Shown here: positions 240 through 63,268 of the stretch, in pieces
How the letters are laid out: the number at the start of each line of letters is the position of its first letter
Numbering within the stretch: the stretch's first letter is position 1
Origin: Octopus sinensis
Lineage: Eukaryota
Direction of reading: 5' to 3'
DNA: 64,000 bases
Assembly (NCBI RefSeq): GCF_006345805.1
Contig: NC_043009.1
Coordinates: forward strand, 54,188,001-54,252,000
Program-made: the position numbers and the translations under genes
Notes under the pieces: generated by a model
Seen by the model: the letters and a program-made list of their open reading frames with translations, nothing else
What the model was told of the DNA's origin: nothing
Databases searched by the model: none

Positions 240-1560
240 GTCAGTTGAGAAATATCCCTCAAATAGCTTTCCCCAAGCACATTAACTGATCATGATAATG
301 TTATCAAAGGGACATCATGATCAACTCCCGTTTCCTGTTCAACAACCGATGCATCATAATGTTCCAGTAAAGTAATCATTATAACAGATTATCGTCATGA
401 ATAGTAGAACTGCCACTTGCTAATATTCAATTTCCAACATTTCCTAAGCAATCCTGGCAGCAACGTCATAATATAGCAATATCACTGTTCAAACTGCAGA
501 ATCCCCAAAGGAATTCGCAAGCCACAAAGATAAATTAATTAACACAATACCTAAGGATGTTGTATTCATAATGACCCAAACAATGACATATTTTTCTCTG
601 TATGATATCATAAATATATAATACAGAGGAAAACTAGCAACAGACAGCACATTAAACACTTAACATGACAAAATCCCAACGTCGCTCCAAACACCCAGAC
701 GAACAGACCTAACAGAAAATACAAAAACCATCATGGCTTCTGGTGCAACCAAATCTGGGACTCGAACATCTCATCCAACATTGCAAAACAAGTCTTCGCT
801 GCATTCGATCATTGGTTCCCTAAAGACAGCAAAATATCCGACCGTCACACTATAAAACTGTCCCATGATGACTTATTAAAAATGGAGCATCATATTCATA
901 GGATGCTCACAATAACCCAAAAAAATTGACTATGACTCATATAACCAACCTACAGACAATGCTAATACCACCCAATTAGTGCATCAACGTGATAATGACA
1001 CGAAGTGTAATACCAACCAACCGATAGGAGACAACAGTAATATCTACAATAATTAACCAACGTTTCACACCAGCAACAATTCAAACAATAGCACGAACAC
1101 ACCCAGAAATAGTAATAATAATAGGATAACCATCACCAGGAATATACTGAATAAAACCAATCCATCTAATGTTCGCTGCACAAAAGCAAACAAAAGAACC
1201 AACCAATTATGCTCATGCAGAGACAGATCCAAAAGTCCCATGAACAATCAGTGTATGACCAGAAATGTGGTGTATACGTATATATCGGTGAATCGGCCGA
1301 TATATTCAAATATCGATATCGCAACCACATTGCCAGCTTTCAAAAAATCCTTAAATGGCTTGTACATCACTGGGCGATTTTATCTAGAGATTCAAGAGAG
1401 AGAAGACAAAAATGACATGACCTGATCCATAATTAGATATGCGAGTCCCTACACCACAGCAATCTAAACTACACTTAACTGGTGTAAACCTAACAATCAC
1501 AGCCCGTATCAATCCTCCCGAATTAAAACCTCATATATTGATAAAGATCGGAATGACATG
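240..1560 (+). mobile_element. Degenerate Penelope-like retroelement (end of RT region, zinc-binding linker, GIY-YIG endonuclease), Naiad-like
   Basis: Broken frames give DHWFPKDSKISDRHTIKLS (~805-865; compare DKHFP..KIFNRNTVKxSYSC), CSCRDRSKSPMNNQCMTRNVVY (1210-1275) and YIGESADIFKYRYRNHIASF (~1280-1340), in the expected order. The 5' boundary is approximate. Confidence 0.72.
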
Positions 1561-2839: not shown

Positions 2840-2875
<36 letters not shown>

Positions 2876-3101
2876 CTTTTACTCTTTTACTCTTTTACTT
2901 GTTTCAGTCATTTTGACTGCGGCCATGCTGGAGCACCGCCTTTAGTCGAGCAAATCGACCCCGGGACTTATTCTTTGTAAGCCCAGTACTTATTCTATCA
3001 GTCTCTTTTGCCGAACCGTTAAGTGACGGGGACGTAAACACACCAGCATCGGTTGTCAAGCAATGCTAGGGGGACAAACACAGACACACAAACACACACA
3101 C

Positions 3102-3151
<50 letters not shown>

Positions 3152-3320
3152 TATATACATATATACGACAGGCTTCTTTCAGTTTCCGTCTACCAAATCC
3201 ACTCACAAGGCATTGGTCGCCCCGGGGCTATAGCAGAAGACACTTGCCCAAGATGCCACGCAGTGGGACTGAACCCGGAACCATGTGGCTGGTTAGCAAG
3301 CTATTTACCACACAACCACT
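2876..3320 (-). mobile_element. tRNA-derived SINE, family A, full length with internal microsatellite
   Basis: Minus strand: tRNA-like head (gtggttgtgtggtaaatagc...ggttcagtccca), CORE-like cttgggcaagtgtctt, internal (TA)/(TG) tract, 3' ggcggtgctccagcatggccgcagtca..tgactgaaac and (aagtaaaaga)-type tail. Many copies in the window. Confidence 0.9.
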
Positions 3321-4379: not shown

Positions 4380-5640
4380 GTGTGTCCCCCACGAAACTAA
4401 CAAGAAATCCCTAAAATTTGCCGTTATTTCCTACGTTACAGGCTCTTCACACGTAGCGACTGCATCTTTAAACATCTACCTGGTACTAGACGCACAATCC
4501 CGACAAACACTACCAGCCAAGGCCAAAGCGCGCATCCCACAATAACATCAACACTACCAAATAGTAAATTGAATGTTAAAACACGCATAACATGGAATCT
4601 CAGAATTTGCCGGCATTTCCAACGCTAGAAACTATGTCTGTTGCGTGACTGCCCCTTTACTTATTTTCCAGGGACCCGAAGCACTAACAGAAATGGGGTC
4701 CAAGCTAACGCACAGACCATAGTAAAACCACTGCCTATTGCAGTAATACTGGTCCAGTCTTTTCACGAAGACACAAATAACAATAACAACAAAAACCAGA
4801 AGAAGAGCGGAAACGACAACCCTATCCAACAGTGCAACAACACCTCCAGTCAAAACCTGCTCCCTAAGCAGGAGATTTCTTTTTGCCATGTGGACCCTGA
4901 CAAAAGTAATGCAAAAAAAAATTTAGCAATCATTCAATACCATCCTATATTATTATCCCTGTGCACCAACTCCCCACATTACTATCATTAACACACAATC
5001 AGAAAACAGGCTCCCCGCAAAAGTCAAAACCTGCCACTACGCTAGCCTCCATATTTCTGCTCAATGTACAAGTTATCACTCCCTCCACCAATGCACAAAA
5101 ATAGAAGATCCAGTTTATTGAGAATTGGGTTGGTAACCATCCATATTACATCTATTTCTTAATTCTTACCGAGACCCGCCTTGACAACTCCCACTTGGAA
5201 GCCGAAATGAAAGTAAATAATTTCACAATTATCTGCGCGGATCGAGTCGACAGAAGGATGAGTGGAACTATATTTTTCCGGCATGGTTCCTTTTCGGCAG
5301 TTAGAAATATGACGTTACCCAATGGCTACTGTGAATCGGTCACCGAGCAAAACAAACCCAATGAACTGATAGTAGTTGAGCTGTACAGGCCACCTCAAAT
5401 GCCCATACTGCGCTTTAATGAATGCCCCAACAACATTAAGTGCTTTATTCAACAGTGCCATTCTAATAACATAATTATGATGGGAGATTTTAATCTACCC
5501 TGTGTTGAGTGGCCAACAAACAGTTTGAAATCAGGCACTCCAACCTCAACTGCTGACAAAGAAGCAACAGAATCACTTCTCGACTTCATAAATGAATTCA
5601 AATGTCTAGTATTTGAACAGTTCCGGGACTATGTACTCCA
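4380..5640 (+). mobile_element. CR1/L2-type LINE relic: possible end of ORF1 plus APE endonuclease domain, no RT
   Basis: LTETRLDNSHLEAEM (~5165-5210), VELYRPP, IMMGDFNLPCVEW and ESLLDFINEF are typical APE motifs. Upstream KICRYFLR and RICRHFQR*KLCLLRDCPF resemble CCCH fingers. Confidence 0.7.
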
Positions 5641-5842
5641 AACTGTTGCAGTAACGAGTTTGTATGGCAACAGATAGAGTTTGGTGCTTTATAGCATGCT
5701 GCTATCTTATTCGGTCATCTGTATAGCATTCAATCTTTAGGCTTGATGATTGAACCCACATGCTCTTCCTTACCTATATGGCTAGTTCCGCCTACCCGAC
5801 TTTAGTCGTGTAACACACAAGGCTGACATAGATTGCATATCA

Positions 5843-5884
<42 letters not shown>

Positions 5885-6072
5885 AATAATGAAGGGTGAA
5901 ATTAATTAATTTGGAATAATTATCAATTACACCAAGTAGTCTTCGGCATGTAAAAGCCTCATTCGAGGAAAATTTAAGTAATACTAAGCAATAAAGGGTT
6001 TAGCAACGAATTGCCTTACCACAGACCGAATTTAGAAATAGCAGTCAATATAATATATATATATATATATAT

Positions 6073-6281
6073 ATTTCTTTATTGCCCACAAGGGGCTAAA
6101 CATAGAGGGGACAAACAAGGACAGACAAACGGATTAAGTGCGTAACTGGTACTTAATTTATCGACCCCGAAAGGATGAAGGGCAAAGTCGACCTCGACGG
6201 AATTTGAACTCAGAACGTAACGGCAGACGAAATACGGCTGCGCATTTCGCCCGGCGTGCTAACGATTCTGCCAGCTCGCCG
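6073..6281 (-). mobile_element. tRNA-derived SINE, family B, with small internal deletion
   Basis: Minus strand ggcgagctggcagaatcgttagcacg...gagttcaaattcc (A/B boxes), central gtcgactttgcccttcatcctttcggggtcgataaa, tail ggcaataaagaaat. Confidence 0.9.
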
Positions 6282-8404: not shown

Positions 8405-8771
8405 ATTTCTTTATTGCCCACAGGGGGCTAAACATAGAGGGGACCCCAGTTACTGATACTCATTTAATCGACCCCGAAAGGGTGAAAGGCAAAGTCGACC
8501 TCGGCAGAATTTGAACTCAGAACGTAGCGGCAGACGAAATACCTATTTCTTTACTACCCCCAATGGGGCTAAACACAGAGAGGACAAACAAGGACAGACA
8601 AATTAAGTCGATTATATCGACCCCAGTGCGTAACTGGTACTTATTTAATCGACCCCGAAAGGATGAAAGGCAAAGTCGACCTCGGCGGAATTTGAACTCA
8701 GAACGTAGCGGCAGACGATATACCGCTAAGCATTTCACTCGGCGTGCTAACGCTTCTGCCAGCTCGCCGCC
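8405..8771 (-). mobile_element. Tandem family-B SINE: full unit 8771-8544 plus 5'-truncated unit 8543-8405
   Basis: Two consecutive family-B units; junction cagacgaaatacc|tatttctttac. Confidence 0.88.
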
Positions 8772-9203: not shown

Positions 9204-10461
9204 CTGGTTTTGGACAAAATAATGGAAACACCTTAAATTTCAAGCAAGTTTTATTTTAATATGGGGAAGGACTGCTAATTACAGCTTTAATTCTATGAAC
9301 TTGTACAAAGTTTGAATTGTTTCTAAAGGAATTTTTGTCGATACTTCAGCTAAAACAGTCTCCAGTTCTTGTAATGATAATAGTAGAGTATATCGACTCC
9401 TTACTTGTTTTTTTCTAAAATGCACCTTAAATGTTCAATAAGATTGAGATTTGGGGACTGTGGTGGTCAGATGAGATGTTCAACGTCACTAGGATCTTCC
9501 TCGTTCCAATCAGTAACAACTTTAGCTGTGTGAATTGATGCATTATCATCCTGAAAGATTGCGTTTCCCTCCGGAAACAGTTCCGCAACCATAGGATGGA
9601 TTTGATCAGAAAAAATGCTTAAATAGCATTGACTATTAATTTTGTAATGAAGGGGAACCATTAGGCCGGCTTATTTCCAAGATATACCCCACTCCCTAGA
9701 TCATCACATATCTTCCTCCATGTTCAACAGTTGGAAGAAGGCAGTCTGCGTCAAATCCTTCTTTTGGCAGTCCCCGCACGTATATTCGGCCGCTGGTTGG
9801 AAATATGGTACAGGATGACTCGTCCGAGAAAATGGCATTCTTCCACTGCTCTAGGGACCAATTCTGTAGGTTTTTACTCTACTCTAACTACTTTGCAAAC
9901 TTTGATTTTGAATGTAGGGGTTTTCTGATTGCATACCCGTGAAATCTGGCTTTGTGCAGCTCCCGGCGAACAGTTTTTGTGAAAACTGGATTCCCGAGGT
10001 GGCCATTAAGCTCTGCAGTAATTTTTGGAGCTGTACTTCTAAGGTTCTTTCTAACAATTCGCGTAAGAATCCGACGATCCCTATTTGAAAGTTTTCGTTT
10101 TCTTCAAGAGTTTTGTTTCGACGAGGAGGTTTTTCCCTCTTTCTCAAAGGCTGTTATTTCTTTCGAGACAGTACTTCTTGATGCACCAAACATTTCGGCT
10201 GTTTTCGTTACGCTAGCTCCTGCCAAACGAGCACCAGCAATTTTACCTCTTTGAAAGTCCGATACATCTGTTATTTTTAATAAATTTTAATTACCTCTTT
10301 CTGTTTATATCTCAAAAGAAACAGCAATTTTAACAAAACATATTAAGCAACACAAATAATAAATCAAAACACAAAAATAAACGAGCTTTTGACGGTTTTA
10401 TAGATATTTCAAAATTATGATGCTATGATGCTACGCGTTCCATTATTTTGTCCAACCCCTG
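9204..10461 (-). mobile_element. Full-length but inactivated Tc1-family transposon with DD36E spacing
   Basis: TIRs ctggttttggacaaaataatggaa and ttccattattttgtccaacccctg, TA on both flanks, 1258 bp. Transposase SDFQRGKIAGARLAGASVTKTAEMFG...RKLSNRDRR...TVRRELHK, FSDESS, FQDDNASIHTAK...I*PPQSPNLNLIE, with stops and frameshifts. Confidence 0.92.
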
Positions 10462-13820: not shown

Positions 13821-14240
13821 TATTTCTTTACTCCCCACAAAGGGGCTACACAGAGAGTGGACAAGCAAGGACAGACAAACAGATTAAGTCGATTATATCG
13901 ACTCCAGTGCGTAACTGGTACTTATTTAATCGACCCCGAAAGGATGAAAGGCAAAGTCGACCTCGGCGGAATTTGAACTCAGAACGTAACTGCAGACAAA
14001 ATACCTATCTCTTCACTACCCACAAGGGACTAAACACAGAGAGAGGACAAACAAGGACAGACAAACGGATTAAGTCGATTATATCGACCTTAGTGCGTAA
14101 CTGGTACTTATTTAATCGACCCCGAAAGGATGAAAGTCAAAGTCGACCTCGGCGGAATTTGAACTCAGAACGTAACGCAGACGAAATACCGCTATGCATT
14201 TCGCCCGGCGCGCTAACGTTTCTGCCAGCTCGCCGCCTTA
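13821..14240 (-). mobile_element. Tandem family-B SINE: full unit 14240-14006 plus 5'-truncated unit 14005-13821
   Basis: Same architecture and junction (aaatacc|tatctcttcac) as 8405-8771. Confidence 0.88.
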
Positions 14241-15967: not shown

Positions 15968-16050
15968 TATTGGCTGGCCAAAAAAGCGGCTTCCTTCTTC
16001 CTGCTCTGCCATAGTAACCAAGTTTGTAGAGATACCTGACAGCTGATCTG
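15968..16050 (-). mobile_element. Short Tc1 transposase fragment
   Basis: Reverse complement aligns with 17683-17764 (cagatcagct.tcaggtatctcta.aaacttggttactatgg.agagcag.aagaaggaagcc). Confidence 0.75.
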
Positions 16051-16054
16051 TATT

Positions 16055-16378
16055 AATGTAGTAACACAGTTCTGTATAGAACATCCATGTTATAGTGGCA
16101 AAACAATGTTACCGTCTAGTATTGTTACTACTTATATCTCGTTCAGAGATTTTAGAAGTAGCTACTTTGCTCGTTATGAGATCAGCAGCTTTCTGCCACT
16201 TCTCTGTTTATATACGATGAGTAGAGACGTTAACCAGCTGGAAAAGATGTTTTCGTGGATTTCAAATGTAGTAACACAGTTCTGTATAGAACAGCGATTT
16301 TAAAGGTGTAACAAAATGTTACCGTCTAGTATTGTTAATACTTATATCTCGTTTAGAGATTTTAGAACTATGCTCGTT
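16055..16378. repeat. Direct duplication of about 115-120 bp (16055-16175 and 16264-16378)
   Basis: Shared aatgtagtaacacagttctgtatagaaca...tgttaccgtctagtattgtta.tacttatatctcgtt.agagattttagaa. Confidence 0.85.
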
Positions 16379-16382
16379 TGAT

Positions 16383-16538
16383 AGTGCTCGTGTGGTAAGT
16401 ATCTTGCTTATCAAGCACGTGGTTCCCGGTTCAGTCCCACTGTGTGGCACCTTGTTCAGGTGTCTTCTGCTATAGCTTCGGGCCAACCAAAGCCTTGTGA
16501 GTGGATTTGGTAGACGGAAACTGAAAGAAGCCCGTCGT
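16383..16538 (+). mobile_element. Family-A SINE 5' half
   Basis: gtgtggtaagtatcttgct...ggttcagtcccactg...gtagacggaaactgaaagaagcccgtcgt, then the internal TA tract. The 3' half is missing and the palindrome follows instead. Confidence 0.85.
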
Positions 16539-16616
16539 ATATATATATATATATATTTTTAAAATAATAAGTATATGAAAGAATGGAGTTGAACGACTAG
16601 TTAACAAATATCCTTT

Positions 16617-16701
16617 ATTCTCGACATATGTTTCGAAGGCTGCATATTCCTAATTCCGATGGAATAAGGAGTACATTATGCAGATTTCTCATCAGGAAAA
16701 T
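16617..16701 (-). ncRNA. Minimal type-I hammerhead ribozyme (mirror copy in left arm)
   Basis: Exact reverse complement of 16843-16927. Confidence 0.8.
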
Positions 16702-16842
16702 CAAGGAACTTATGTCGACATCAAAATTCACAAAAAACGTTTAGCTGACCGCTCTCAAGGAGCCCATATTATCGCCATGGGCTCCTTGAGAGCGGTCAAC
16801 TAAAAGTTTTTTGTGAATTTTGATGTCGACATAAGTTCCTTG

Positions 16843-16927
16843 ATTTTCCTGATGAGAAATCTGCATAATGTACTCCTTATTCCATCGGAATTAGGAATAT
16901 GCAGCCTTCGAAACATATGTCGAGAAT
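16843..16927 (+). ncRNA. Minimal type-I hammerhead ribozyme (Penelope-type)
   Basis: Stem I attttc/gagaat; core CTGATGA 16849-16855; stem II gaa/ttc plus ctgcata/tatgcag with inner ttcc-atc-ggaa hairpin; GAAA 16910-16913; palindromic stem III CATATG; GUC cleavage site after 16921. Confidence 0.82.
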
Positions 16928-17158
16928 AAAGGATATTTGTTAACTAGTCGTTCAACTCCATTCTTTCATATACTTATTATTTTAAAATAAACATACAAAT
17001 TTCCGCACGAAGACACGTAGTCTATGCCCTAGGGACGTAGCTTCAACCGTGTTCTTTCTGATGTGAATTTGCTACCCAGGTATCGGCTATCTTTCGAATT
17101 ATCCTTAATAAGATAATTCATTCAATTACTCAAATATTATATATATATATATATGCGC

Positions 17159-17192
<34 letters not shown>

Positions 17193-17199
17193 ATATATA

Positions 17200-17247
<48 letters not shown>

Positions 17248-17388
17248 GTGCATATATATATGTGTGTGTATATATATATATACAGCAGACCATAAAACAT
17301 TGCTTTATGGTTATTATAACTTGTAAGGTTTATATTTTTTTAGAATTGACATTTTTATGTTTTAGGTTCTACATGTGACTTTTTAATT

Positions 17389-18300
17389 ATGCCATGTACA
17401 AAAGAAACGTTGAAACTGTCTGAATTTCAAAGAGGCCATATTGTGGAACACTCTGAAGGTGGATATAGTCTGAGTAAAATCATAGAAAACGTTGAGATCC
17501 CTCTTCTTCCAGTTAATAGAGTGATTGTGCATACAATTCACCAAAGAGGAGAAGGAGTCCACATCACCACGCCCAGTTTGACCAGGGCTCTCTGACAAGA
17601 CCATTCTCTTTGTTAAGAAAAGTATGGAGGATAATCCTCGTTGCAAGACCTATGGCATAGCAGAAAACGTTGATGTCAGTGCCAGATCAGCTCTCAGGTA
17701 TCTCTATAAACTTGGTTACTATGGTAGAGCAGCAAGAAGGAAGCCACTTCTTTGACCAGCCACTATCAATCGGAGAAAAGATTGGGCCAGTGAGATGGTA
17801 TAGAGGCCACTGTCATTTTGGGGCACTGTCATATTCTCCAATGAGTCCAGATTTGCTGTATTTCCTGACAGTAGTGAAGTCTAGAGACCCTGTGAACAAC
17901 GATTTTATGTGAAAAGTTTGCAGCCAACAAAGAAACATGCCAGCTATGCTGTGATGGTCCGGGAAGCAATTTGAAGCAATGGTCAATCAGAGCTAGTGGA
18001 TTATGAGAGAAAATTAAACTCAGATTAATATTCCTTACAATCTTCTCCAGTGGTGAAATAAATAAAGACAACTCTTCCTTTATGGAAGATGTGACCCCTT
18101 GACACACGGGTAAAATGACCCAAGATTTTTTGGATGAGAATAACATTAAAAAGCTTCCATGGTGAAGCCAGTCACCAGATATGAACTCTTTTAACACCTC
18201 TGAGGCATAATGTACAGGACACTTCATAAAAACAACAAGAACGCATCTTCAAAGCCATATCTTTTAAGATTGCTCCATGGAACTTGGCAAGAAATTCTTC
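17389..18300 (+). mobile_element. Decayed Tc1-family transposase (DD34E spacing)
   Basis: MPCTKETLKLSEFQRGHIV..., RAARRKPLL, FSNESRF, MEDVTP*H, PW*SQSPDMN; the catalytic-Glu position lies 34 residues after the second Asp. TIRs not resolved. Confidence 0.8.
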
Positions 18301-19326: not shown

Positions 19327-19715
19327 GGTAGGCACAGAAGTTGCTTACTAACCCCATGGTTCCGGGTTCAATCCCACTGCATGACACCTTGGGCAAGTGT
19401 CTTCTACTATAGCCTCGGCCGATCAAAGACTTGTGAGTGGATTTGGGAGACGGAAACTGAAAGAAGTCCGTCATATATATATATATACGTGTGTATGTTT
19501 GTGTGCCTGAGTGTATCCCCTAACATCGCTTGACAACTGATGCTGGTGGGTTTACGTCTCTGTATCTTAGCGGTTCGGCAAGAGAGACCGATAGAATAAG
19601 TAATAGGCTTTCAAAGAATATGTCCTGGCACCGATTTGCTCGACTAAACGCGGTACTCCAGCATGGCCGCAGTCAAATGACTGAAACAAGTAAAAGACTA
19701 AAAAGAGTAAGAGAG
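19327..19715 (+). mobile_element. Family-A SINE, full length
   Basis: Head gggttcaatcccactgc, accttgggcaagtgtctt, short TA/TG linker, tail gcatggccgcagtcaaatgactgaaacaagtaaaaga. Confidence 0.88.
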
Positions 19716-20134
19716 TTATTTTCTTATATTTGTAAAATGTAAACACCTTCGGAAGAAATCAGTTGCGTTATGTGAATTGCATATTGATTCTTTCGTCACA
19801 CTGCCGGTTGAGACCGTAAATTGGGGAATGCCTTTTTCATGTTAAATCTTCATAATAATTTAGGAGGGGAAAAGAGAGACTTAAAGATGGACCAAGGACT
19901 GACGTCATGCAACAGCTAGCACTGAGGAAAACGCTGGTCGTGTTCACATGCTGATGAATGACAGGTGGTTGGCGCTAACTCAATAGTCAATACTATTAGC
20001 ACATCGCGTGCGAGAGTTTAGAGTATTGTGTACAATGAACTTGGCATGACGAAAGTTTCTGCCTGATGAGTGCCTTCTGACACCTGATTAAAAGTACACA
20101 GGAATGACCACATTTAAAAAAATTTTTTTTTTAT

Positions 20135-20525
20135 ACTTGCTTCAGTCATTTGACTGCGGCCATGCTGGAGCACCGCCTTTAGTCGAGCAAATCAACCCCA
20201 GGACTTATTCTTTGTAAGCCCAGTACTTATTCTATCGGTCTCTTTTGCCGAACCGCTAAGTGACGGGAACGTAAACACACCAGCATCGGTTGTCAAGCAA
20301 TGCTAGGGGGACAAACACAGATACACAAACATATACACACACACACATATATATATATACATATATACGACAGGCTTCTTTCAGTTTCCGTCTACCAAAT
20401 CCACTCACAAGGCATTGGTCGGCCCGGGGCTATAGCAGAAGACACTTGCCCAAGATACCACGCAGTGGGACTGAACCCGGAACCATGTGGTTGGTTAGCA
20501 AGCTACTTATCACACAGCCACTCCT
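20135..20525 (-). mobile_element. Family-A SINE, full length
   Basis: Colinear with, and very similar to, 2876-3320. Confidence 0.9.
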
Positions 20526-31194: not shown

Positions 31195-32015
31195 TTGGGT
31201 TGGCAACTAAGTTCCCACCGTTTTATTAAATTTTGGAATTTATTGCGTTTTTAAATTTTGCAATCTAATTTTTTCGAGAATTCTATTTTTGAATAATTTT
31301 GGAATCTTTTTTTTTCTAGTTAATTTTAGTTAATTTTTGTTTATTTTCAGATCATTAAAATAGAATGTCAAGTTAAGAAAAACGGGCATTTTCGATACCT
31401 CCTTTTCGCTTTTAATCAAGGTTCTAAGGCCGCTCACGACATTTGTGATGTATATGGAAAGGGTGCCATAGCTGAAAGAACCTCTCGTGATTGGTATGCC
31501 AAGTTCAAAAATGGTAATTTTCACCTCAAAGACGCACCTCGTTCTGGCCGTCCAGTTGAGTAGGATGAAGAGCGATTAAACCAACTTTTGCACGTAAATT
31601 CTCGTCAAACGACAGGGGAACTGGCAGTGAAAATGGAATGCTCCGACACTGTTATAGAGAAGCATCTTCACTCGATGGGAAAGTTTCAGAAGTATGGAGC
31701 ATGGATTCCGCATGCTCTAAGTGACATCAACAAAATCAACGAGCCACTATCTCCGCCGGTTTGCTTGCTCGTCACCGCTCAACTAATGGACACAAGCAAC
31801 GATTTGTTTACCGAATCGTTACTGGCGACGAAAAATGGTTCTGTACATGAATATCAAGCAGCGTTAGGAATGGTTTAGCCCGTAAAACAAACGACACTGC
31901 GCATGAAACAAGATCTTCGTCCGCGTAAAACGATGGTGTGCGTAAGGTGGGACTGGGAATGGATTATCTATTACGAATTGTTTGAACAGAACCCATCGGT
32001 CAACGTGGAACTCTA
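31195..32015 (+). mobile_element. Mariner transposon, 3'-truncated
   Basis: Left TIR ttgggttggcaactaagttccc. Transposase HFRYLLFAFNQG...DWYAKFKNGNFHLKDAPRSGRP, WIPHALS (WVPHEL motif), RIVTGDEKW. Ends at a TA microsatellite. Confidence 0.9.
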
Positions 32016-32025
32016 AGTATGTATA

Positions 32026-32060
<35 letters not shown>

Positions 32061-32062
<2 letters not shown>

Positions 32063-32190
32063 GACGGGCTTCTTTCAGTTTCCGTCTACCAATTCCACTC
32101 ACAGGGTAGTAGAAGACACTTGCCCAAGGTGCCATGCAGTGGGAGGGAACCCGGAATCATGTGGTTCGTAAGCAAGCTACTTAACACACA
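32061..32190 (-). mobile_element. Family-A SINE 5' half
   Basis: acgacgggcttctttcagtttccgtctacc...gaagacacttgcccaagg...gaacccggaatcatgtgg. Confidence 0.8.
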
Positions 32191-54598: not shown

Positions 54599-55561
54599 GT
54601 ATGTATGTACGTATGTATCTACGTATGTATACGTATACATGAATACGTATGTAAATGTATGCGCAAAAGCATATCGATATATATATATATGTATGTATGT
54701 ATATGTATATATACACACATGCTTAATAGATATAACTTTGCTTGAGAGATAGATAGATAGATACATAGATACATAGATACATAGATAGATAGAGAAAGAC
54801 TGAGACAGGAATAGAGAGGCAGAGATCGACAATGGGAAGTATAATGATCTGAAGAGCAGGAGTCGTCACGCACACACATGTATAATATAGTATATAGATT
54901 TATATAAGTGTATTTGACTGAATACATGCAGCCACAAGCGCAGAGACATATATATGCATATGTCTATTTCCCATCATTTCAACGTATGTTATGGCGTCAA
55001 CATCATACTGTATATAAGCAGGTTATTCTCACCACTCACCACATCGTATACCTTGTTGTAGAGTTAAGTTATTGGAATATTATAGTTCTCAATATTGACA
55101 GGCACGTTTCATAGACAGTCTGCCGTTTCGGTATTAGCCTTAACCACTGCATGTCTTTTATGTATTACACTGAAGTTTCTATCGATCTAGACACTCGAAA
55201 TTGGCTGCCATTTTGTCGGGCAAGCGAAACACCGTAACTGATTAGCTCATAAATAATTTTGCAACGCAATTAAAGACCTAAGCGTAAATTTGGGAGTGGG
55301 CCAGCGAGATTTTTCACTACCCTCAATCAATTTTGTTCTATGATTGAAATTATTAGCCTGTGATATACGTATGTGCTGCATGCATATACACACACGCATA
55401 TATATGCACATAGATGTAGTCAGAGAGACAGAGAGAATTACAAAGATAAGATATATAAGATGAATAGAAAGACAGATAGAAAGATTCGCATACATACATC
55501 CACACATACGTACAGAGAGATACATACACACACAAACATATATATATATATATAAATATAT

Positions 55562-55790
55562 ATTCCTTTATTGCCCACAAGGGGCTAAACATAGAGGGTA
55601 CAAACAAAGACGGACAAAGGGATTAAGTCAATTACATCGACCCCAGTGCGTAACTGGTACTTTATTTATCGACCCCGAAAGGATGAAGGGCAAAGTCGAC
55701 CTCGGCGGAATTTGAACTCAGACCGTAACGGCAGACGAAATACGTCTACGCATTTCGCTCGGCGCGCTAACGTTTCTGCCAGCTCACCGC
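55562..55790 (-). mobile_element. Family-B SINE, monomer
   Basis: Full match to the family-B pattern; tail ggcaataaaggaat. Confidence 0.9.
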
Positions 55791-56684
55791 ATATATACAT
55801 GCATATATGGGTACAGGACGTTACCGACGGTGTAAAAAACATGAAATACGTAAGCAAGAAGAAAAATCAGAGAGAAAGGAACACGCATCATTTGTCGCCT
55901 GTCTATCTACTCCTCATTTCGAGCATTCAACGACAAGGCGTATATAGACAGCCGACAACTGATGAAACGTCCTTTCTCTTTGTTTACTTGTCAGCTTTTC
56001 CATTTATTCTTGATGTTTACCTATTTTACTCATTTTTTTCTTCGTTTGTTTACACATTTCATGTTATTTGCACCGTGGGTGACGTCATGTACACATATAT
56101 GCACGTATTTCTTCATTTATTTATCTATTATATATATATATATACTTTCTAAGCCAGATTACGAGGATGCAAACACACCAGCATCGGTTGTCAAGCGACT
56201 GTGAGAGGACAAACACAGACACACAAATAATACCTAAATTTTCCTTATTCCATCAGACCCTTTCGTCCACTCGTTAAATTACTCGGACATAAACAAACCA
56301 GTACCCGTACATGAGTGGTGGGGCAGAAACGACTCAGAAATAAGCACGCACTCTCACACATATACACGCCCACTCCTGTATATATACACACACACACACA
56401 AACTAATCTGTCCCTATGTTGTGCCCGTATCTGTGAATGTTAAATCGTATGTGCCTATATGCTAGCTTTTCTTACGTAGTTATTGGTTCATATAAGCAAT
56501 TATATACACGATTATATAACATTAATACGTCTAGCTATCACATAGGTATCAAACTTTAACCTTGTATTGATATTATATTATATCATTTTATATTATTATA
56601 TTATCATATTATTTTGCAGTTTGATATTTCTACCATTTCGTCGAGGCAAGCGGAAATATAAACAGAATATATGCAGTTAATTAA

Positions 56685-56915
56685 GGCGGCGAGCTGGCAG
56701 AACCGTTAGCACGCCGGGCGAAATGCGTAGCCGTATTTCATCCGCCGCTACGTTCTGAGTTCAAATTCCGCCGAGGTCGACTTTGCCTTTCATCCTTTCG
56801 GGGTCGATAAATTAAGTACTAGTTTCGCACTGGGGTCGATGTAATCGACCTAATCCCTTTGTCTGTCATTGTTTGTCCCCTCTATGTTTAGCCCCTTGTG
56901 GGTAGTAAAGAAATA
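56685..56915 (+). mobile_element. Family-B SINE, monomer with target-site duplication
   Basis: ggcggcgagctggcagaaccgttagcacg...ggtagtaaagaaata, flanked by atatatgcagttaatt (56667-56682) and atatatgcagccaatt (56915-56930). Confidence 0.92.
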
Positions 56916-60025: not shown

Positions 60026-63000
60026 GATTGATTGATTGATTGATTCCAGTTCCAGCCTATGAGCTGTGGCCATGCTGGGGCACCGCCATTTGGTGTTGCT
60101 ACTTGGTTTTACTTCATGGAGGCTTTCTAGCAACTGCTATTTGGTGCATGAGAGAGTTCGATGCAGCTGCCCTCATCTGCCCCTCCTGCCGTGAAGTTGG
60201 TTCATCTGGGACACCTGACAGGAAGAGATCCAGCTTCATTTTAAAGACATCTGTATCCACCCCATGCAGGTCTCTCAGGTTCTTCGGGAGGATATTGAAG
60301 AGCTGTGGGCCTCGGAAGCCCAGGCTATCACAGAATCTTGTCCTACATCTTGATGGCAGGTTTGGAGTCCTAGGCACCACGCAGTGGCGCCCAGTTCTGG
60401 CATTTGTGTAACTCTCGATGCCAAAGTTCAGGACACTTCCCTCCAGGATCTTCCAGATGTATATTATGGCATATCTTTCCGCCTACGCTCCAGGGAGTAT
60501 AATTTTAATCTCTTGAGTCTTTCCCAGTAGCTTACATTCTGCATAGAGGCTATCTTCTTTGTGTAGCTTCGTTGGATCGCCTCAAGTTCTGTGATCAACT
60601 TGACACTGGATGGTGACCATAGCTGAGAGCAATAGTCAAAGTGGCTTAGGACAAGTGTCTTCCAGAGGACCATCATGGTTTCTTGTTCTCTTGTTCTAAA
60701 GGTTCTAAGAATCCAGCCAGCCAGCCGTCTACATTTCACTGTCAGTTTAGCAACATGTACATGAAAGGTCGCGTCATCACTCATGTGAATACCCAGGTCA
60801 CGCACTGATTGTGCCTCTGGGATTGCAATCCCTCCGGGTCCAGTGTATTCATTGGGTATTGCATTCAATTTTGCATGCTGATAGTATAAAGCTTGAAACT
60901 TTCCAGCATTGAACTGCATGCTATCTTCTTTCAGCCCACTTGTATATTTCGTCCAGCTCACATTGCAGGTTTTTAGTGTCCTCAGGGTTCTGTATTGCCT
61001 GTGAAACTTTTGTATCATCTGCATAACTTGTGATCGTGGATCTCTGCGTGGCTGAGGGCATGTCTGAGAGGGCCATTATGAACAGTAGTGGTCCAAAACA
61101 GTGCCCTGTGGAACACCACTCATTATTTGCGTGTTAATGGAAGTGGCCCCATTGGCTACTACACACCTGACTTCTATTCTTCAGAAAGTCGTGAAGCCAT
61201 TCTCCTAGTTTTCCAACTATGCCAAGATCACGCAGCCTGTGACATATCATTCCGTGATCGACTTTATCGAAGGCCTTGCGCGAAGTCGAGATATATGACT
61301 TCCACATTTGAGTGGTTGAGCAGTTGTTTCAGCACCCAGTCATAGTGCTGCAGGAGCTGAGTTAAGCAGCTTCTTCCTGGTCGGAAACCATGTTGGGTGT
61401 CAGGCAGCAAGTCATTTTCTTCAAGGAAGGTGATTAGTTTCCTTCTGACTATTCGTTCCATGACCTTGCTGATGTGTGAGGTCAGAGAGATAGGTCTGTA
61501 GTTCTTTGCCTCCGCTCTGCTACCTCCTTTATGAATAGGGCATATTTTACCTTCCTTCAGTCCCCTTGGAAGTTTGCCAGCTGCAAGGAAGCTCTGAAAG
61601 AGGGACTGCAGTGGTCTTGCTAAGACTCTCTTACATACTTTTAGGAGGATTGCCGGGAATCCATCGGGGCCAGTAGCTGAGTCTATTTTCATTTCATCTA
61701 TAGCCTTTATTACATCGTCTTCCTTTATCTCGATGTAACTTATCGTCGCCGCCTCTGATTCTATATCTGCAGTGGTAAAGAAGTCAGTTGGATTGCTGAT
61801 TTGGAAATGCCCAAGGGGTGGAGTGAAAACACTCTTGAATTGTTCATTCAGTATTTCACTTACCCTCATTGGTTTTCCTGTGAGTGTGCCATCCTTTTCA
61901 AGGAGTGGCCCTATCCTACAGTGCACTGTAGCCGTTTCTTTGGCATACCTGTAGAAAGCTCTGGGGTTAGTTTTTATGTTGTCTATAGCCCAGGCTTCTT
62001 TGTCTGCTCTTTCCTTCTCATGGGAAAGTTGCAGACAATTTTCAATTTCCAACAGTTTTATTTTCAGGCGGGACTTTTCACTACTTTCAATTTGTTTGTT
62101 TAGGCGATTTGAAATTTTTGTACGCCGTCTCATTAGAATTTTCCTCTCTCTGGGGATTTTGTTCTTGTGTACAGTGGCCTTTCTCTCTGGGACACATTTG
62201 TAGCATATGGCTTGCATTACAGACATGAATTGTTGAAGTATCATGTCGATGTCCGGCGGGGAGAGACATTCAGGCCAGTTTTGTTTGAGGATCTCTTTCT
62301 CAATTTGTTTCCAGTTTGCCTTATTGAAGTTCAAGCTGGAAAGATTCTGAGGGTTTCTTGTAGGCTGCATGTCCGTGCTCTCTTTTGGCCCGTACATGGT
62401 CAGCTCTACCATGTTGTGATCCGAGAGTAGTGTCGGTGTCACTTTCACATTATGGATGAGATCCATATTATTTGTGAAGCAGAGATCCAGTGTGTTACCT
62501 GCTCTGGTTGGTTGCAGTATTACTTGCTCCATGTACAGGGTGTTGGTAAGGTTCAGGAGGGACCTCGCCTGTCCACGTTCACATCTTGTCATTCCTGGGA
62601 GAGAAAGGCCCTCGGGCCATCTGACATTCGGTAGATTGAAGTCTCCCATGAGAAGTACACTTATGTGTTGTTCTAATGTGGTTAGAACTTCTTCTATTTT
62701 TAAAAGGCAGTCCTCGAACTTGCCCATATGACTTGGGGCATCTGGAGGGCGATATGTAGCACACACAACTACATCAAGTTGCCTTTGTGTACAATTAGTG
62801 TGTCACACACCGAGTTTGAGTATGACAAAAGGACCTGGGGTGTGAGGTCCCCACGGATGTACATAGCAACTCCTCCATGACTCCTTTCTTTCCTGTCGGT
62901 CCGTAGTACAACATACTGTGGTATGTGTAATTCCGCATCTGCTATGTCCGGTTTCAGATGCGTTTCTGTGAGTGCTATGCATAAGGCTTGATTGCATGCG

Positions 63001-63268
63001 ACAAAGTCTCTCAGGAACGGGACTTTTGTCCTGTTACTGTGTGTTAGTAAACCTCTGATGTTCAGTAGGAGCATCGAGGTGAGGTGTATGCTGTTGCCGG
63101 CGTTGTCCACCCTGGGTCCATCTGCTGTGGCGGTCTTGTGAACTGTGGGCAGTTCCATCTGCGAGCCTGAGCCTGATGGAGCCAGGTTAGCTGCTGTACA
63201 ATCTTTTGTGCCATGCACAAAAAAGATTCCTGCTCAGCAGCTGCCCTTTCAACAACACGTTGGTGGTT
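60026..63268 (-). mobile_element. CR1-clade LINE, 5'-truncated near the end of ORF1; ORF2 (APE plus RT) nearly complete but frameshifted
   Basis: APE: LLNIRGL, ALTETHL, RTDRKERSHGGV, ATYRPP, LMGDFNLP, PTRAGNTLDL, SDHNMV. RT: TGPDGFP, NYRPISLTS, QHGFRPGRSCLTQL, YLDFA, GVPQGTV, YADDTK (61008-61025). CR1-type C-terminus: SQLWSP, LEAIQR, LYSLERRR, FNILPKNLR. Tail (AATC)5. Confidence 0.95.

What the first reader, a model, noticed from the sequence alone, without database searches (positions are those of the whole stretch)
16557..16987. 431-bp palindrome carrying two outward-facing hammerhead ribozymes
The 211-bp arms have only 2 mismatches around a 9-nt spacer. The right arm encodes a complete minimal type-I hammerhead on + (16843-16927) and the left arm its mirror on minus. 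Minimal hammerheads with a palindromic stem III (here CAUAUG) are known from Penelope pseudo-LTRs and are reported to cleave well as dimers; inverted pLTRs are also known. Inference: a read-through transcript from either side would fold into ~211 bp of dsRNA that sequesters the ribozyme and is an ADAR/Dicer substrate, whereas transcripts starting near the centre would self-cleave. That would make it a ribozyme switch depending on transcription start, or a fold-back retrozyme-like element. It sits in the TA linker of a family-A SINE, and the right arm continues into ~150 bp of unpaired sequence.
Basis: partly seen in the sequence, partly recalled or inferred. Interest (0 to 1): 0.78.

Follow-up and report, generated by a model that had tools for sequence, protein, structure and literature searches.

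The report
Inverted hammerhead retroelement insertion in octopus
A real 431-bp near-perfect palindrome carrying two mirror-image hammerhead ribozyme motifs sits in an octopus-type genome, and it is most likely the ordinary head-to-head scar left by a Penelope-like retroelement rather than a purpose-built ribozyme switch.

Summary
Arms 16557-16767 and 16777-16987 (211 nt, 2 mismatches, 9-nt spacer) form the only complex near-perfect palindrome in the window. Each arm carries a complete type-I hammerhead motif facing outward (Rfam Hammerhead_1, full model, 29.2 bits, below the 34-bit gathering score; predicted cuts after C16921 on + and C16623 on -).

The window comes from an octopod genome. Joining the flanks shows that the inserted unit is 581 nt (16557-17137): the palindrome plus a 150-nt extension on one side. 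It was dropped into the (TA)n linker of a SINE.

Published descriptions of endonuclease-bearing Penelope-like elements (PLEs) match five features: head-to-head inverted repeats of about 200 bp, a palindromic junction, a one-sided 3' extension, an AT-rich/(TA)n target, and a hammerhead with a short palindromic helix III.

So the best reading is a short, non-coding, PLE-type retrotransposition product. The palindrome is a by-product of integration (self-primed fold-back or priming from both target strands).

The "transcription-start-dependent ribozyme switch" is thermodynamically possible but has no supporting evidence. Monomer self-cleavage is not expected for this kind of motif.

I found no other family copy and no parent PLE, because these tools do not index cephalopod genomes at the DNA level.

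Verdict: new member of a known kind, modest interest.

The parts
16383..16537 (+). tRNA-related head of an octopus SINE, the host of the target site. This copy lacks the ~200-nt SINE body.
   Evidence: Five other copies in the window at 74-88% identity. Six copies at about 88% in the Octopus sinensis locus L001. Full copies continue as head-(TA)n(TG)n-body.
16538..16556 (.). Left half of the split (TA)n target microsatellite (SINE linker)
   Evidence: TRF: (TA)9.5, 100% matches. Joined-flank test.
16557..16767 (-). Left arm: inverted copy of the first 211 nt of the element. Sense is on the minus strand, with its 5' end at the centre.
   Evidence: 209 of 211 positions complementary to the right arm.
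16617..16701 (-). Mirror type-I hammerhead motif. Predicted cut after C16623, between 16623 and 16622.
   Evidence: Rfam RF00163, 29.2 bits, E 8.3e-6, full model. Descriptor hit at 16623-16695. Sequence identical to the plus-strand copy.
16768..16776 (.). 9-nt non-palindromic spacer ATTATCGCC at the head-to-head junction
16777..16987 (+). Right arm: direct copy (pLTR-like), with its 5' end at the centre
16843..16927 (+). Type-I hammerhead motif. Helix I: 16837-16848 paired with 16922-16933 (12 positions, one G.A mismatch). Core CUGAUGA: 16849-16855. Extended helix II: 16856-16909 (54 nt). GAAA: 16910-16913. Helix III ACAUAUGU: 16913-16920. C17 at 16921, predicted cut between 16921 and 16922.
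   Evidence: Rfam RF00163, 29.2 bits, E 8.3e-6, model 1-45/45. Coordinates and folds. Dimer cofold.
16988..17137 (+). 150-nt one-sided 3' extension of the direct copy. It is part of the insertion and has no counterpart on the left.
   Evidence: No other copy in the window. Removing 16557-17137 restores the canonical SINE linker order (TA)n then (TG)n, whereas removing only the palindrome does not. CpG observed/expected is 1.38.
17138..17282 (.). Right half of the split linker microsatellite: (TA)n GCGC (TG)n (TATG)n (TA)n
   Evidence: TRF. Comparison with intact SINE linkers.

Best explanation
The locus is a 581-nt non-coding insertion (16557-17137) made by Penelope-like-element (PLE) type retrotransposition into the (TA)n linker of an octopus SINE.

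The template RNA was a hammerhead-bearing pLTR-like sequence. It was either the heavily 5'-truncated 3' end of a PLE transcript or a non-autonomous pLTR derivative, and 361-370 nt of it were copied (16777-17137 on the + strand).

The second arm, inverted and 211 nt long, arose during the same integration event. Either the cDNA end folded back and primed on itself (the self-priming model proposed for PLE palindromic junctions), or both strands of the cut target primed reverse transcription, as the only reconstituted PLE enzyme does in vitro. Either route gives the head-to-head palindrome with a 9-nt junction and a 3' extension on one side only.

The two hammerheads are inherited cargo of the PLE/retrozyme lineage. 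In that lineage such motifs have a 2-bp helix III with a palindromic loop and are thought to act as dimers on multimeric transcripts.

At this locus they have no dedicated role. If the region is transcribed through, the RNA becomes a hairpin of about 211 bp (a generic ADAR/Dicer substrate) and the ribozyme fold is sequestered.

Shown: the palindrome, the motifs, the insertion boundaries, the target, and the absence of coding capacity or tandem copies. Inferred: the PLE origin, the integration mechanism, and the lack of function.
For: 1. Structure: head-to-head 211-nt arms with a 9-nt junction and outward-facing hammerheads, so the 5' ends meet at the centre.
2. The insertion is the asymmetric 581-nt unit. 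The joined flanks rebuild the canonical SINE linker order (TA)n then (TG)n, as seen in intact copies here and in O. sinensis.
3. The motif design matches PLE hammerheads: full conserved core, G10.1-C11.1, long helix II, and a short helix III with a palindromic loop. A homodimer forms an 8-bp intermolecular helix III (PMC4209133).
4. Literature match: PLE copies are bounded by inverted pLTRs of 181-218 bp, head-to-head is the most frequent arrangement, the junctions are palindromic and interpreted as self-priming, and an optional tail occurs at the 3' end of only one inverted pLTR (PMC3846280). Insertions are highly 5'-truncated, often with an adjacent inverted copy, and at least one clade prefers (TA)n targets (PMC8557442).
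5. The PAc enzyme cleaves and extends both target strands, prefers AT-rich DNA and starts reverse transcription internally. Every PLE 3' end therefore carries the hammerhead plus downstream sequence (PMC11167929).
6. PLEs are annotated in octopus genomes, with 31 families and 336 insertions in the O. vulgaris table that lists them (PMC13282606; PMC8967140). The window is octopod.
7. The insertion looks young: arms differ by 0.95% and CpG is not depleted (observed/expected 1.18 vs 0.84 for the window).
Against: - I found no second copy of the arm or the extension, in the window, in the one O. sinensis locus fetched, or in the metagenome and viral collections. Family membership is therefore not demonstrated.
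- No PLE RT/GIY-YIG remnant is present in the window.
- The one-sided extension is 150 nt, far longer than the 30-40-nt tail described for PLEs.
- Described PLE insertions usually place the inverted pLTR next to a full or partial element. A bare inverted pair without internal sequence is the minimal case, and the papers I read do not describe it as such.
- The target-site duplication cannot be read because both flanks are (TA)n.
- The Rfam score is below the gathering threshold, and cleavage is untested.
Confidence: 0.68

Rival explanations
1. Secondary inverted duplication. A single-copy hammerhead element (16777-17137) inserted first. The left arm was made later by DNA-level template switching or fold-back repair at a replication fork or double-strand break, independently of retrotransposition.
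For: Replication template switching is a documented source of perfect hairpins and inverted duplications (titles and abstracts of PMC8794818 and PMC10766183, listed). The short spacer and near-identity of the arms are equally compatible with this. The (TA)n flanks are fragile, structure-prone DNA.
Against: It is less parsimonious, because inverted head-to-head copies are the signature outcome of PLE integration itself (PMC3846280, PMC8557442). The left arm also ends exactly at the (TA)n target, as expected for an integration junction.
Confidence: 0.12
2. DNA-transposon derivative: a fold-back element or MITE made of two long terminal inverted repeats, inserted at a TA dinucleotide. In this reading the hammerhead is incidental and the 150-nt stretch is pre-existing target DNA.
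For: The palindrome is bordered by T/A-rich sequence on both sides, so a TA duplication cannot be excluded. Tc1/mariner remnants occur in the window. MITEs are annotated in octopus genomes (PMC13282606).
Against: The joined-flank test favours the asymmetric 581-nt unit as the insertion. A complete hammerhead with a 12-position helix I and a 54-nt helix II is very unlikely by chance in a 211-nt arm (about 0.17 hits expected per 128 kb of shuffled sequence). The termini (TTTTAAAATAA...) do not resemble the CAGT-type ends I recall for Tc1/mariner elements (from memory, not tested). There is no other copy in the window.
Confidence: 0.05
3. Assembly artefact: a fold-back chimeric read or mis-join created the inverted copy.
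For: PLE tandem and inverted structures are known to trouble assemblies (PMC8557442, PMC3846280). Long perfect palindromes are generally unstable in vivo (established knowledge). I have no read-level data.
Against: A fold-back chimera mirrors everything up to the break. Here the mirror stops after 211 nt and the two outer flanks differ: SINE head plus (TA)n on the left, a unique 150 nt on the right. The arms differ at 2 positions and are separated by a non-palindromic 9-nt spacer. No other such palindrome occurs in the window. The structure matches a known biological architecture.
Confidence: 0.05
4. Functional element: a ribozyme switch dependent on the transcription start site, or a domesticated hairpin locus producing ADAR-edited dsRNA or small RNAs.
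For: Read-through RNA is locked in a hairpin (-391.9 kcal/mol), while arm-only RNA keeps helices I and II. Cephalopods edit dsRNA heavily and editing tracks dsRNA abundance (PMC5625713). Small-RNA polarity switches occur at inverted PLE structures in a rotifer (PMC3846280).
Against: There is no evidence of a promoter at the centre, of conservation, or of expression. A single PLE-type hammerhead with a 2-bp helix III is not expected to cleave as a monomer (PMC4209133). Each transcript carries only one sense ribozyme. The two-state behaviour is an automatic property of any inverted repeat that contains a structured RNA.
Confidence: 0.04

Closest known systems
Head-to-head inverted pseudo-LTRs of endonuclease-bearing Penelope-like elements (e.g. 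Pen2a_Av and Pen2_Av of Adineta vaga, PMC3846280; general PLE scheme in PMC8557442)
   Same: Inverted repeats about 200 bp long (181-218 bp there, 211 bp here), 5' ends meeting at a short or palindromic junction, an extension at the 3' end of only one arm, an AT-rich or microsatellite target, and a hammerhead inside the repeat.
   Different: There is no RT/GIY-YIG ORF or second direct pLTR between or beside the arms, so this is a bare inverted pair. The extension is 150 nt rather than 30-40 nt. Sequence homology to any named PLE could not be tested.
PLE-type hammerhead ribozymes with a small palindromic helix III (Cervera & de la Pena 2014, PMC4209133)
   Same: Type-I topology, full conserved core, G10.1-C11.1, enlarged helix II, helix III of 2 bp capped by a palindromic loop that can extend to an intermolecular helix in a dimer.
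   Different: Helix II is very long (54 nt, with 19 base pairs in four segments). [quoted passage not shown] Activity is untested.
Metazoan non-LTR retrozymes (PMC7229834; proposed PLE derivatives in bioRxiv 10.64898/2026.07.22.740005)
   Same: Short non-coding unit of a few hundred nt with low GC (35%) and a type-I hammerhead; probably mobilised by PLE machinery.
   Different: Retrozymes are tandem direct repeats, which lets the ribozymes excise a monomer that circularises. Here the two copies are inverted, so no strand has two sense ribozymes and no circle can form.
Rfam Hammerhead_1 (RF00163)
   Same: The whole 45-position model is matched, with all core positions.
   Different: The score is 29.2 bits, below the 34-bit gathering threshold, because of the 50-nt helix II insert and the minimal helix III.

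Membership tests
Type-I hammerhead ribozyme (Rfam RF00163) | Conserved catalytic core: C3 U4 G5 A6 N7 G8 A9, G12 A13 A14, A15.1-U16.1, H17 | tested here: met
   CUGAUGA at 16849-16855, GAAA at 16910-16913, U16.1 at 16920, C17 at 16921. Identical on the minus strand.
Type-I hammerhead ribozyme (Rfam RF00163) | Three helices around the core, with helix I open-ended | tested here: met
   Helix I has 11 pairs in 12 positions. Helix II has 3+7+4+5 bp. Helix III has only 2 bp plus an AUAU loop as a monomer, and 8 bp in the homodimer.
Type-I hammerhead ribozyme (Rfam RF00163) | Score at or above the curated gathering threshold (34 bits) | tested here: not met
   29.2 bits, E 8.3e-6 on a 121-nt search. 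No hit at gathering thresholds on the whole window.
Type-I hammerhead ribozyme (Rfam RF00163) | Site-specific self-cleavage | not testable with these tools
   Needs in vitro transcription of monomer, dimer and palindrome constructs.
Penelope-like element (EN+ PLE) insertion | ORF with PLE-type reverse transcriptase and GIY-YIG endonuclease | tested here: not met
   tblastn of the published Poseidon_Ac protein against the window gives a best E of 1.8. The only RT in the window is an EEP-type LINE. The unit has no ORF longer than 49 aa. It can therefore be at most a truncated or non-autonomous product.
Penelope-like element (EN+ PLE) insertion | Pseudo-LTRs in direct and/or inverted (head-to-head) arrangement with a palindromic junction | tested here: met
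   compared with the descriptions in PMC3846280 and PMC8557442.
Penelope-like element (EN+ PLE) insertion | Hammerhead motif inside the pLTR, in sense orientation | tested here: met
   Each arm carries the motif pointing away from the junction.
Penelope-like element (EN+ PLE) insertion | Optional 30-40-bp tail at one end only | tested here: inconclusive
   A one-sided extension exists, but it is 150 nt long.
Penelope-like element (EN+ PLE) insertion | AT-rich or microsatellite target | tested here: met
   The insertion splits a SINE (TA)n linker. The target-site duplication is unreadable in the repeat.
Penelope-like element (EN+ PLE) insertion | Sequence homology of the repeat to the pLTR of an identified PLE family in the same genome | not testable with these tools
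   No cephalopod genome is searchable at the DNA level. Indirect routes failed.
Non-LTR retrozyme | Tandem direct repeats (150-450 bp), each with a type-I hammerhead | tested here: not met
   No direct repeat of the unit was found, only microsatellites. The copies are inverted.
Non-LTR retrozyme | Low GC, non-coding monomer of a few hundred nt | tested here: met
   GC is 35% and the direct copy is 361 nt.
Non-LTR retrozyme | Expression as circular RNA | not testable with these tools
   No transcriptome access.
MITE / fold-back DNA transposon | Symmetric element bounded by terminal inverted repeats and a target-site duplication, and present as a multicopy family | tested here: inconclusive
   A TA duplication cannot be excluded, but the joined-flank test indicates an asymmetric 581-nt insertion. 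There is no second copy in the window.

The most novel reading that the evidence does not exclude
The locus could be one member of a recently active, non-autonomous family of hammerhead-bearing PLE derivatives in octopus. Such a family would home to the (TA)n linkers of the hyper-abundant SINEs. Its obligatory head-to-head structure would make each copy a two-state RNA: a hairpin dsRNA feeding ADAR or small-RNA pathways when read through, and a ribozyme-competent RNA that dimerises in trans when transcribed outward from the junction. That would be a natural ribozyme/dsRNA toggle in the animal group with the most extensive RNA editing.
Probability: 0.05. Interest if true: 0.6.

Novelty: new member of a known kind. 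Interest (0 to 1): 0.3.

Why it matters
If the reading is right, this is a clean, minimal example of the head-to-head product of PLE integration: two arms, a 9-nt junction, one longer 3' end, and an unambiguous (TA)n target with a reconstructible empty site. Such minimal products are useful for choosing between the self-priming and dual-strand-priming models of PLE integration, a question the PLE papers describe as still open.

It also suggests fairly recent activity of a hammerhead-bearing PLE lineage in an octopus, and that SINE linkers serve as its landing pads.

It does not, on present evidence, show a new kind of ribozyme regulation.

Tried and rejected
1. Rfam at gathering thresholds on the whole window gave no hit. 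The permissive scan of 16300-17200 gave only spurious miRNA-precursor matches driven by the hairpin. The hammerhead appears only when one arm is searched alone.
2. My first regex descriptor missed even the known motif because of lazy matching. I rewrote it.
3. Search for other copies:
   - self-BLAST of the arm and the extension against the window: none;
   - pattern CTGATGAGAAAN{35,60}TTCGAAACATATGTC in metagenome and viral contigs: 0 hits;
   - exact look-up of six ORFs from the element and two LINE ORFs: none in the collection;
   - homologue search with the 47-aa stop-free frame of the arm: no candidates;
   - BLAST against the one O. sinensis locus fetched: none.
4. Parent PLE in the window. 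A GIY-YIG-looking peptide at about 1240-1340 was rejected by Pfam and by tblastn with the Poseidon_Ac protein. The RT at 60-63 kb is an EEP-type LINE.
5. Supplement of the retrozyme paper searched for cephalopods: nothing.
6. A Tc1-like HTH at 17350-17592 was suspected, but Pfam did not confirm it.
7. I considered reaching the orthologous locus through a gene anchor. I dropped it because no convincing exon was found among the window's ORFs.
8. I considered using the Poseidon_Ac protein to fish for octopus PLE proteins. I dropped it because the 120 rows returned would very likely be filled by vertebrate PLEs.

Full report
OBSERVATION

Arms 16557-16767 and 16777-16987 are 211 nt long and 99% complementary, 9 nt apart. 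There are exactly two mismatches (16799, 16805), the spacer is ATTATCGCC, and the palindrome does not extend further. As RNA, the unit folds into a nearly perfect hairpin at -391.9 kcal/mol, against -115.8 +/- 6.6 for shuffles (z = -42). It is the only complex-sequence near-perfect palindrome in the 64 kb. The other long inverted repeats are SINE pairs at 87% or less, or microsatellites.

Both hammerheads are also real as motifs. Rfam finds nothing at gathering thresholds, and a regional permissive scan is swamped by hairpin-driven miRNA matches. When one arm is searched alone, Hammerhead_1 (RF00163) matches its full model at 16843-16927 on the + strand (29.2 bits, E 8.3e-6, gathering score 34). 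It matches identically at 16617-16701 on the - strand. A descriptor of my own finds just these two sites in the window, against about 0.17 per shuffled window. Rescaled to a single family, the Rfam E-value is about 1e-6 for the window and about 0.04 for a 2.7-Gb genome.

ANATOMY OF THE RIBOZYME

- Helix I: 16837-16848 paired with 16922-16933, 12 positions with one G.A mismatch after the sixth pair.
- Core: CUGAUGA at 16849-16855.
- Helix II: 16856-16909, 54 nt. It forms 3 bp, a 2x2 internal loop, 7 bp, an asymmetric loop, 4 bp, a bulge on each strand, 5 bp and an AUC loop.
- GAAA: 16910-16913.
- Helix III: A-U and C-G closing a palindromic AUAU loop (ACAUAUGU, 16913-16920).
- C17 is at 16921, so the predicted cut is between 16921 and 16922. 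The mirror cut lies between 16623 and 16622.

The hammerhead-shaped monomer fold (-23.1 kcal/mol) lies 2.2 kcal/mol above the minimum-energy fold (-25.3), which mispairs the core. Two molecules cofold at -58.0 kcal/mol with an 8-bp intermolecular helix III. This is the design described for metazoan and PLE hammerheads: a 1-2-bp helix III with a palindromic loop, thought to be active as dimers (PMC4209133).

SURROUNDINGS AND INSERTION BOUNDARIES

The window is octopod. The LINE ORF at 61267-62802(-) has its best matches in Argonauta hians and Octopus sinensis. A fetched O. sinensis locus carries six copies of the window's SINE at about 88% identity.

That SINE has a tRNA-related head, a (TA)n(TG)n linker and a body of about 200 nt. 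The copy at 16383 has the head and the linker only.

With 16557-17137 removed, the joined flanks read ...CGTCGTATATAT...(TA)n GCGC (TG)n (TATG)n. This is the same order as the linkers of intact copies in this window and in O. sinensis. Removing only the palindrome leaves 150 nt of foreign sequence inside the linker.

The inserted unit is therefore 581 nt: 211 nt inverted, a 9-nt spacer, then 211 + 150 nt direct. Its features:
- no ORF longer than 49 aa;
- no tandem direct repeat;
- GC of 35%;
- CpG observed/expected of 1.18, against 0.84 for the window.

Together with 0.95% divergence between the arms, this suggests a fairly young insertion. That is an inference.

WHAT IT IS

The literature on endonuclease-bearing Penelope-like elements describes this architecture.
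- In Adineta vaga, copies are bounded by inverted pLTRs of 181-218 bp. Head-to-head is the most frequent arrangement. The junctions carry palindromes that the authors interpret as self-priming. [quoted passage not shown]
- PLE insertions are highly 5'-truncated and often carry an adjacent inverted copy. Insertion is biased toward microsatellites, with (TA)n often preferred by the Naiad clade (PMC8557442).
- The only reconstituted PLE enzyme cleaves and extends both target strands and prefers AT-rich DNA. It starts reverse transcription internally, downstream of the hammerhead, so every 3' end carries the ribozyme plus downstream sequence (PMC11167929).
- Hammerheads with a small palindromic helix III are the hallmark of PLE pLTRs (PMC4209133).
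- Animal retrozymes have recently been proposed to be non-autonomous PLE derivatives (bioRxiv 10.64898/2026.07.22.740005).
- PLEs are annotated in octopus genomes (PMC13282606, PMC8967140).

The locus matches on six points: arm length, orientation, junction, one-sided 3' extension, target and ribozyme type. It differs in three: it has no ORF or second direct pLTR, its extension is 150 nt rather than 30-40 nt, and no homology to a named PLE has been shown.

MECHANISM (inferred)

An endonuclease nick in the (TA)n tract primed reverse transcription on an A/U-rich site of the template. Both outer junctions are A/T-rich and blend into the repeat. The cDNA ran 361-370 nt to the 5' end or to a truncation point near 16770.

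The inverted arm then arose in one of two ways:
(a) by fold-back self-priming of the cDNA end, which naturally gives arms that meet at one point with a short loop; or
(b) by a second priming event from the opposite target strand on another RNA copy. This requires a defined RNA 5' end but would explain two different 3' start points (66 and 216 nt past the cleavage site).

I slightly favour (a) because the inner ends of the arms coincide. The data here cannot decide between them.

WHAT IT DOES NOW

Probably nothing specific. Each strand's transcript contains only one sense ribozyme, so no intramolecular dimer and no excisable, circularisable unit can form. It therefore fails the retrozyme definition.

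Read-through RNA is a hairpin with a stem of about 211 bp, which hides the ribozyme and is a generic substrate for ADAR or Dicer. Editing tracks dsRNA abundance across Metazoa, octopus included (PMC5625713).

The claim that centre-initiated transcripts would self-cleave is not supported. PLE-type single motifs showed no detectable cleavage, and dimers cleaved only weakly in vitro (PMC4209133). 'Cleave well as dimers' applies to amphibian satellite hammerheads (PMC7229834).

RIVALS

- A later DNA-level fold-back duplication of a single-copy element (0.12).
- A TA-targeting fold-back element or MITE (0.05). The asymmetric insertion unit and the improbability of an incidental full hammerhead count against it.
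- An assembly artefact (0.05). Against it: the mirror stops after 211 nt, the outer flanks differ, the arms have two mismatches, and the spacer is non-palindromic.
- A functional switch or hairpin locus (0.04), for which there is no evidence.

LIMITS

No cephalopod genome can be searched at the DNA level with these tools. Every indirect route to other family copies or to a parent PLE failed. Family membership, the orthologous empty site, read support, expression and cleavage all remain to be tested.

VERDICT

The most likely reading is a minimal head-to-head product of PLE-type retrotransposition carrying inherited hammerheads, inserted into a SINE (TA)n linker in an octopus genome. It is a new member of a known kind, with interest of about 0.3.

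Noticed in passing
window 15968-16050 and 17683-17765: An 83-nt inverted repeat (90% complementary, 1632 nt apart) encloses the SINE head and the hammerhead unit. The right copy lies in sequence that, read by eye, looks like a decayed Tc1-type transposase region, but Pfam did not confirm any domain in the frames I tested nearby. It may be two inverted fragments of an older DNA transposon.
   Followed up: partly
window 16055-16169 and 16265-16380: A 116-nt direct repeat (87% identity) lies immediately upstream of the SINE head, with its second copy ending 3 nt before the head. Origin unknown.
   Followed up: no
window 16383-17282, compared with 2875-3320(-), 20123-20515(-) and 19341-19714(+): The SINE copy hosting the insertion has the head and the (TA)n(TG)n linker but lacks the ~200-nt body found in full copies. 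A second head-only copy is at 32043-32189(-). The same SINE family occurs six times in 21.5 kb of O. sinensis (L001).
   Followed up: partly
window 60117-63233 (-) and 5105-5674 (+): A LINE with an EEP endonuclease (Exo_endo_phos_2) and an RVT_1 domain, broken into several frames, with best relatives in Argonauta hians and Octopus sinensis at 54-65% identity. A second EEP-endonuclease fragment lies at 5.1-5.7 kb.
   Followed up: partly
window 9891-10103 (-) and 31330-31560 (+): DNA-transposon remnants: a Tc3-type HTH (PF01498, E 1.4e-8) and a Mos1-type HTH_48 (PF17906, E 3.7e-13).
   Followed up: partly
window 6072-6281, 8538-8771, 13821-14240, 55555-55790, 56682-56915: A further interspersed repeat family (about 230 nt, 83-91% identity between copies) whose translation reads ...[24 protein letters not shown].... 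Not classified.
   Followed up: no
window 1240-1340 (+): The peptide SVYDQKCGVYVYIGESADIFKYRYRNH looks like a GIY-YIG core next to the published Poseidon_Ac endonuclease. Neither Pfam nor tblastn supports it, so it is probably chance or decayed beyond recognition.
   Followed up: yes
window 16799 and 16805: The only two differences between the arms lie 23 and 29 nt from the inner end of the right arm, close to the junction. They could be later mutations or copying errors made during fold-back synthesis.
   Followed up: no
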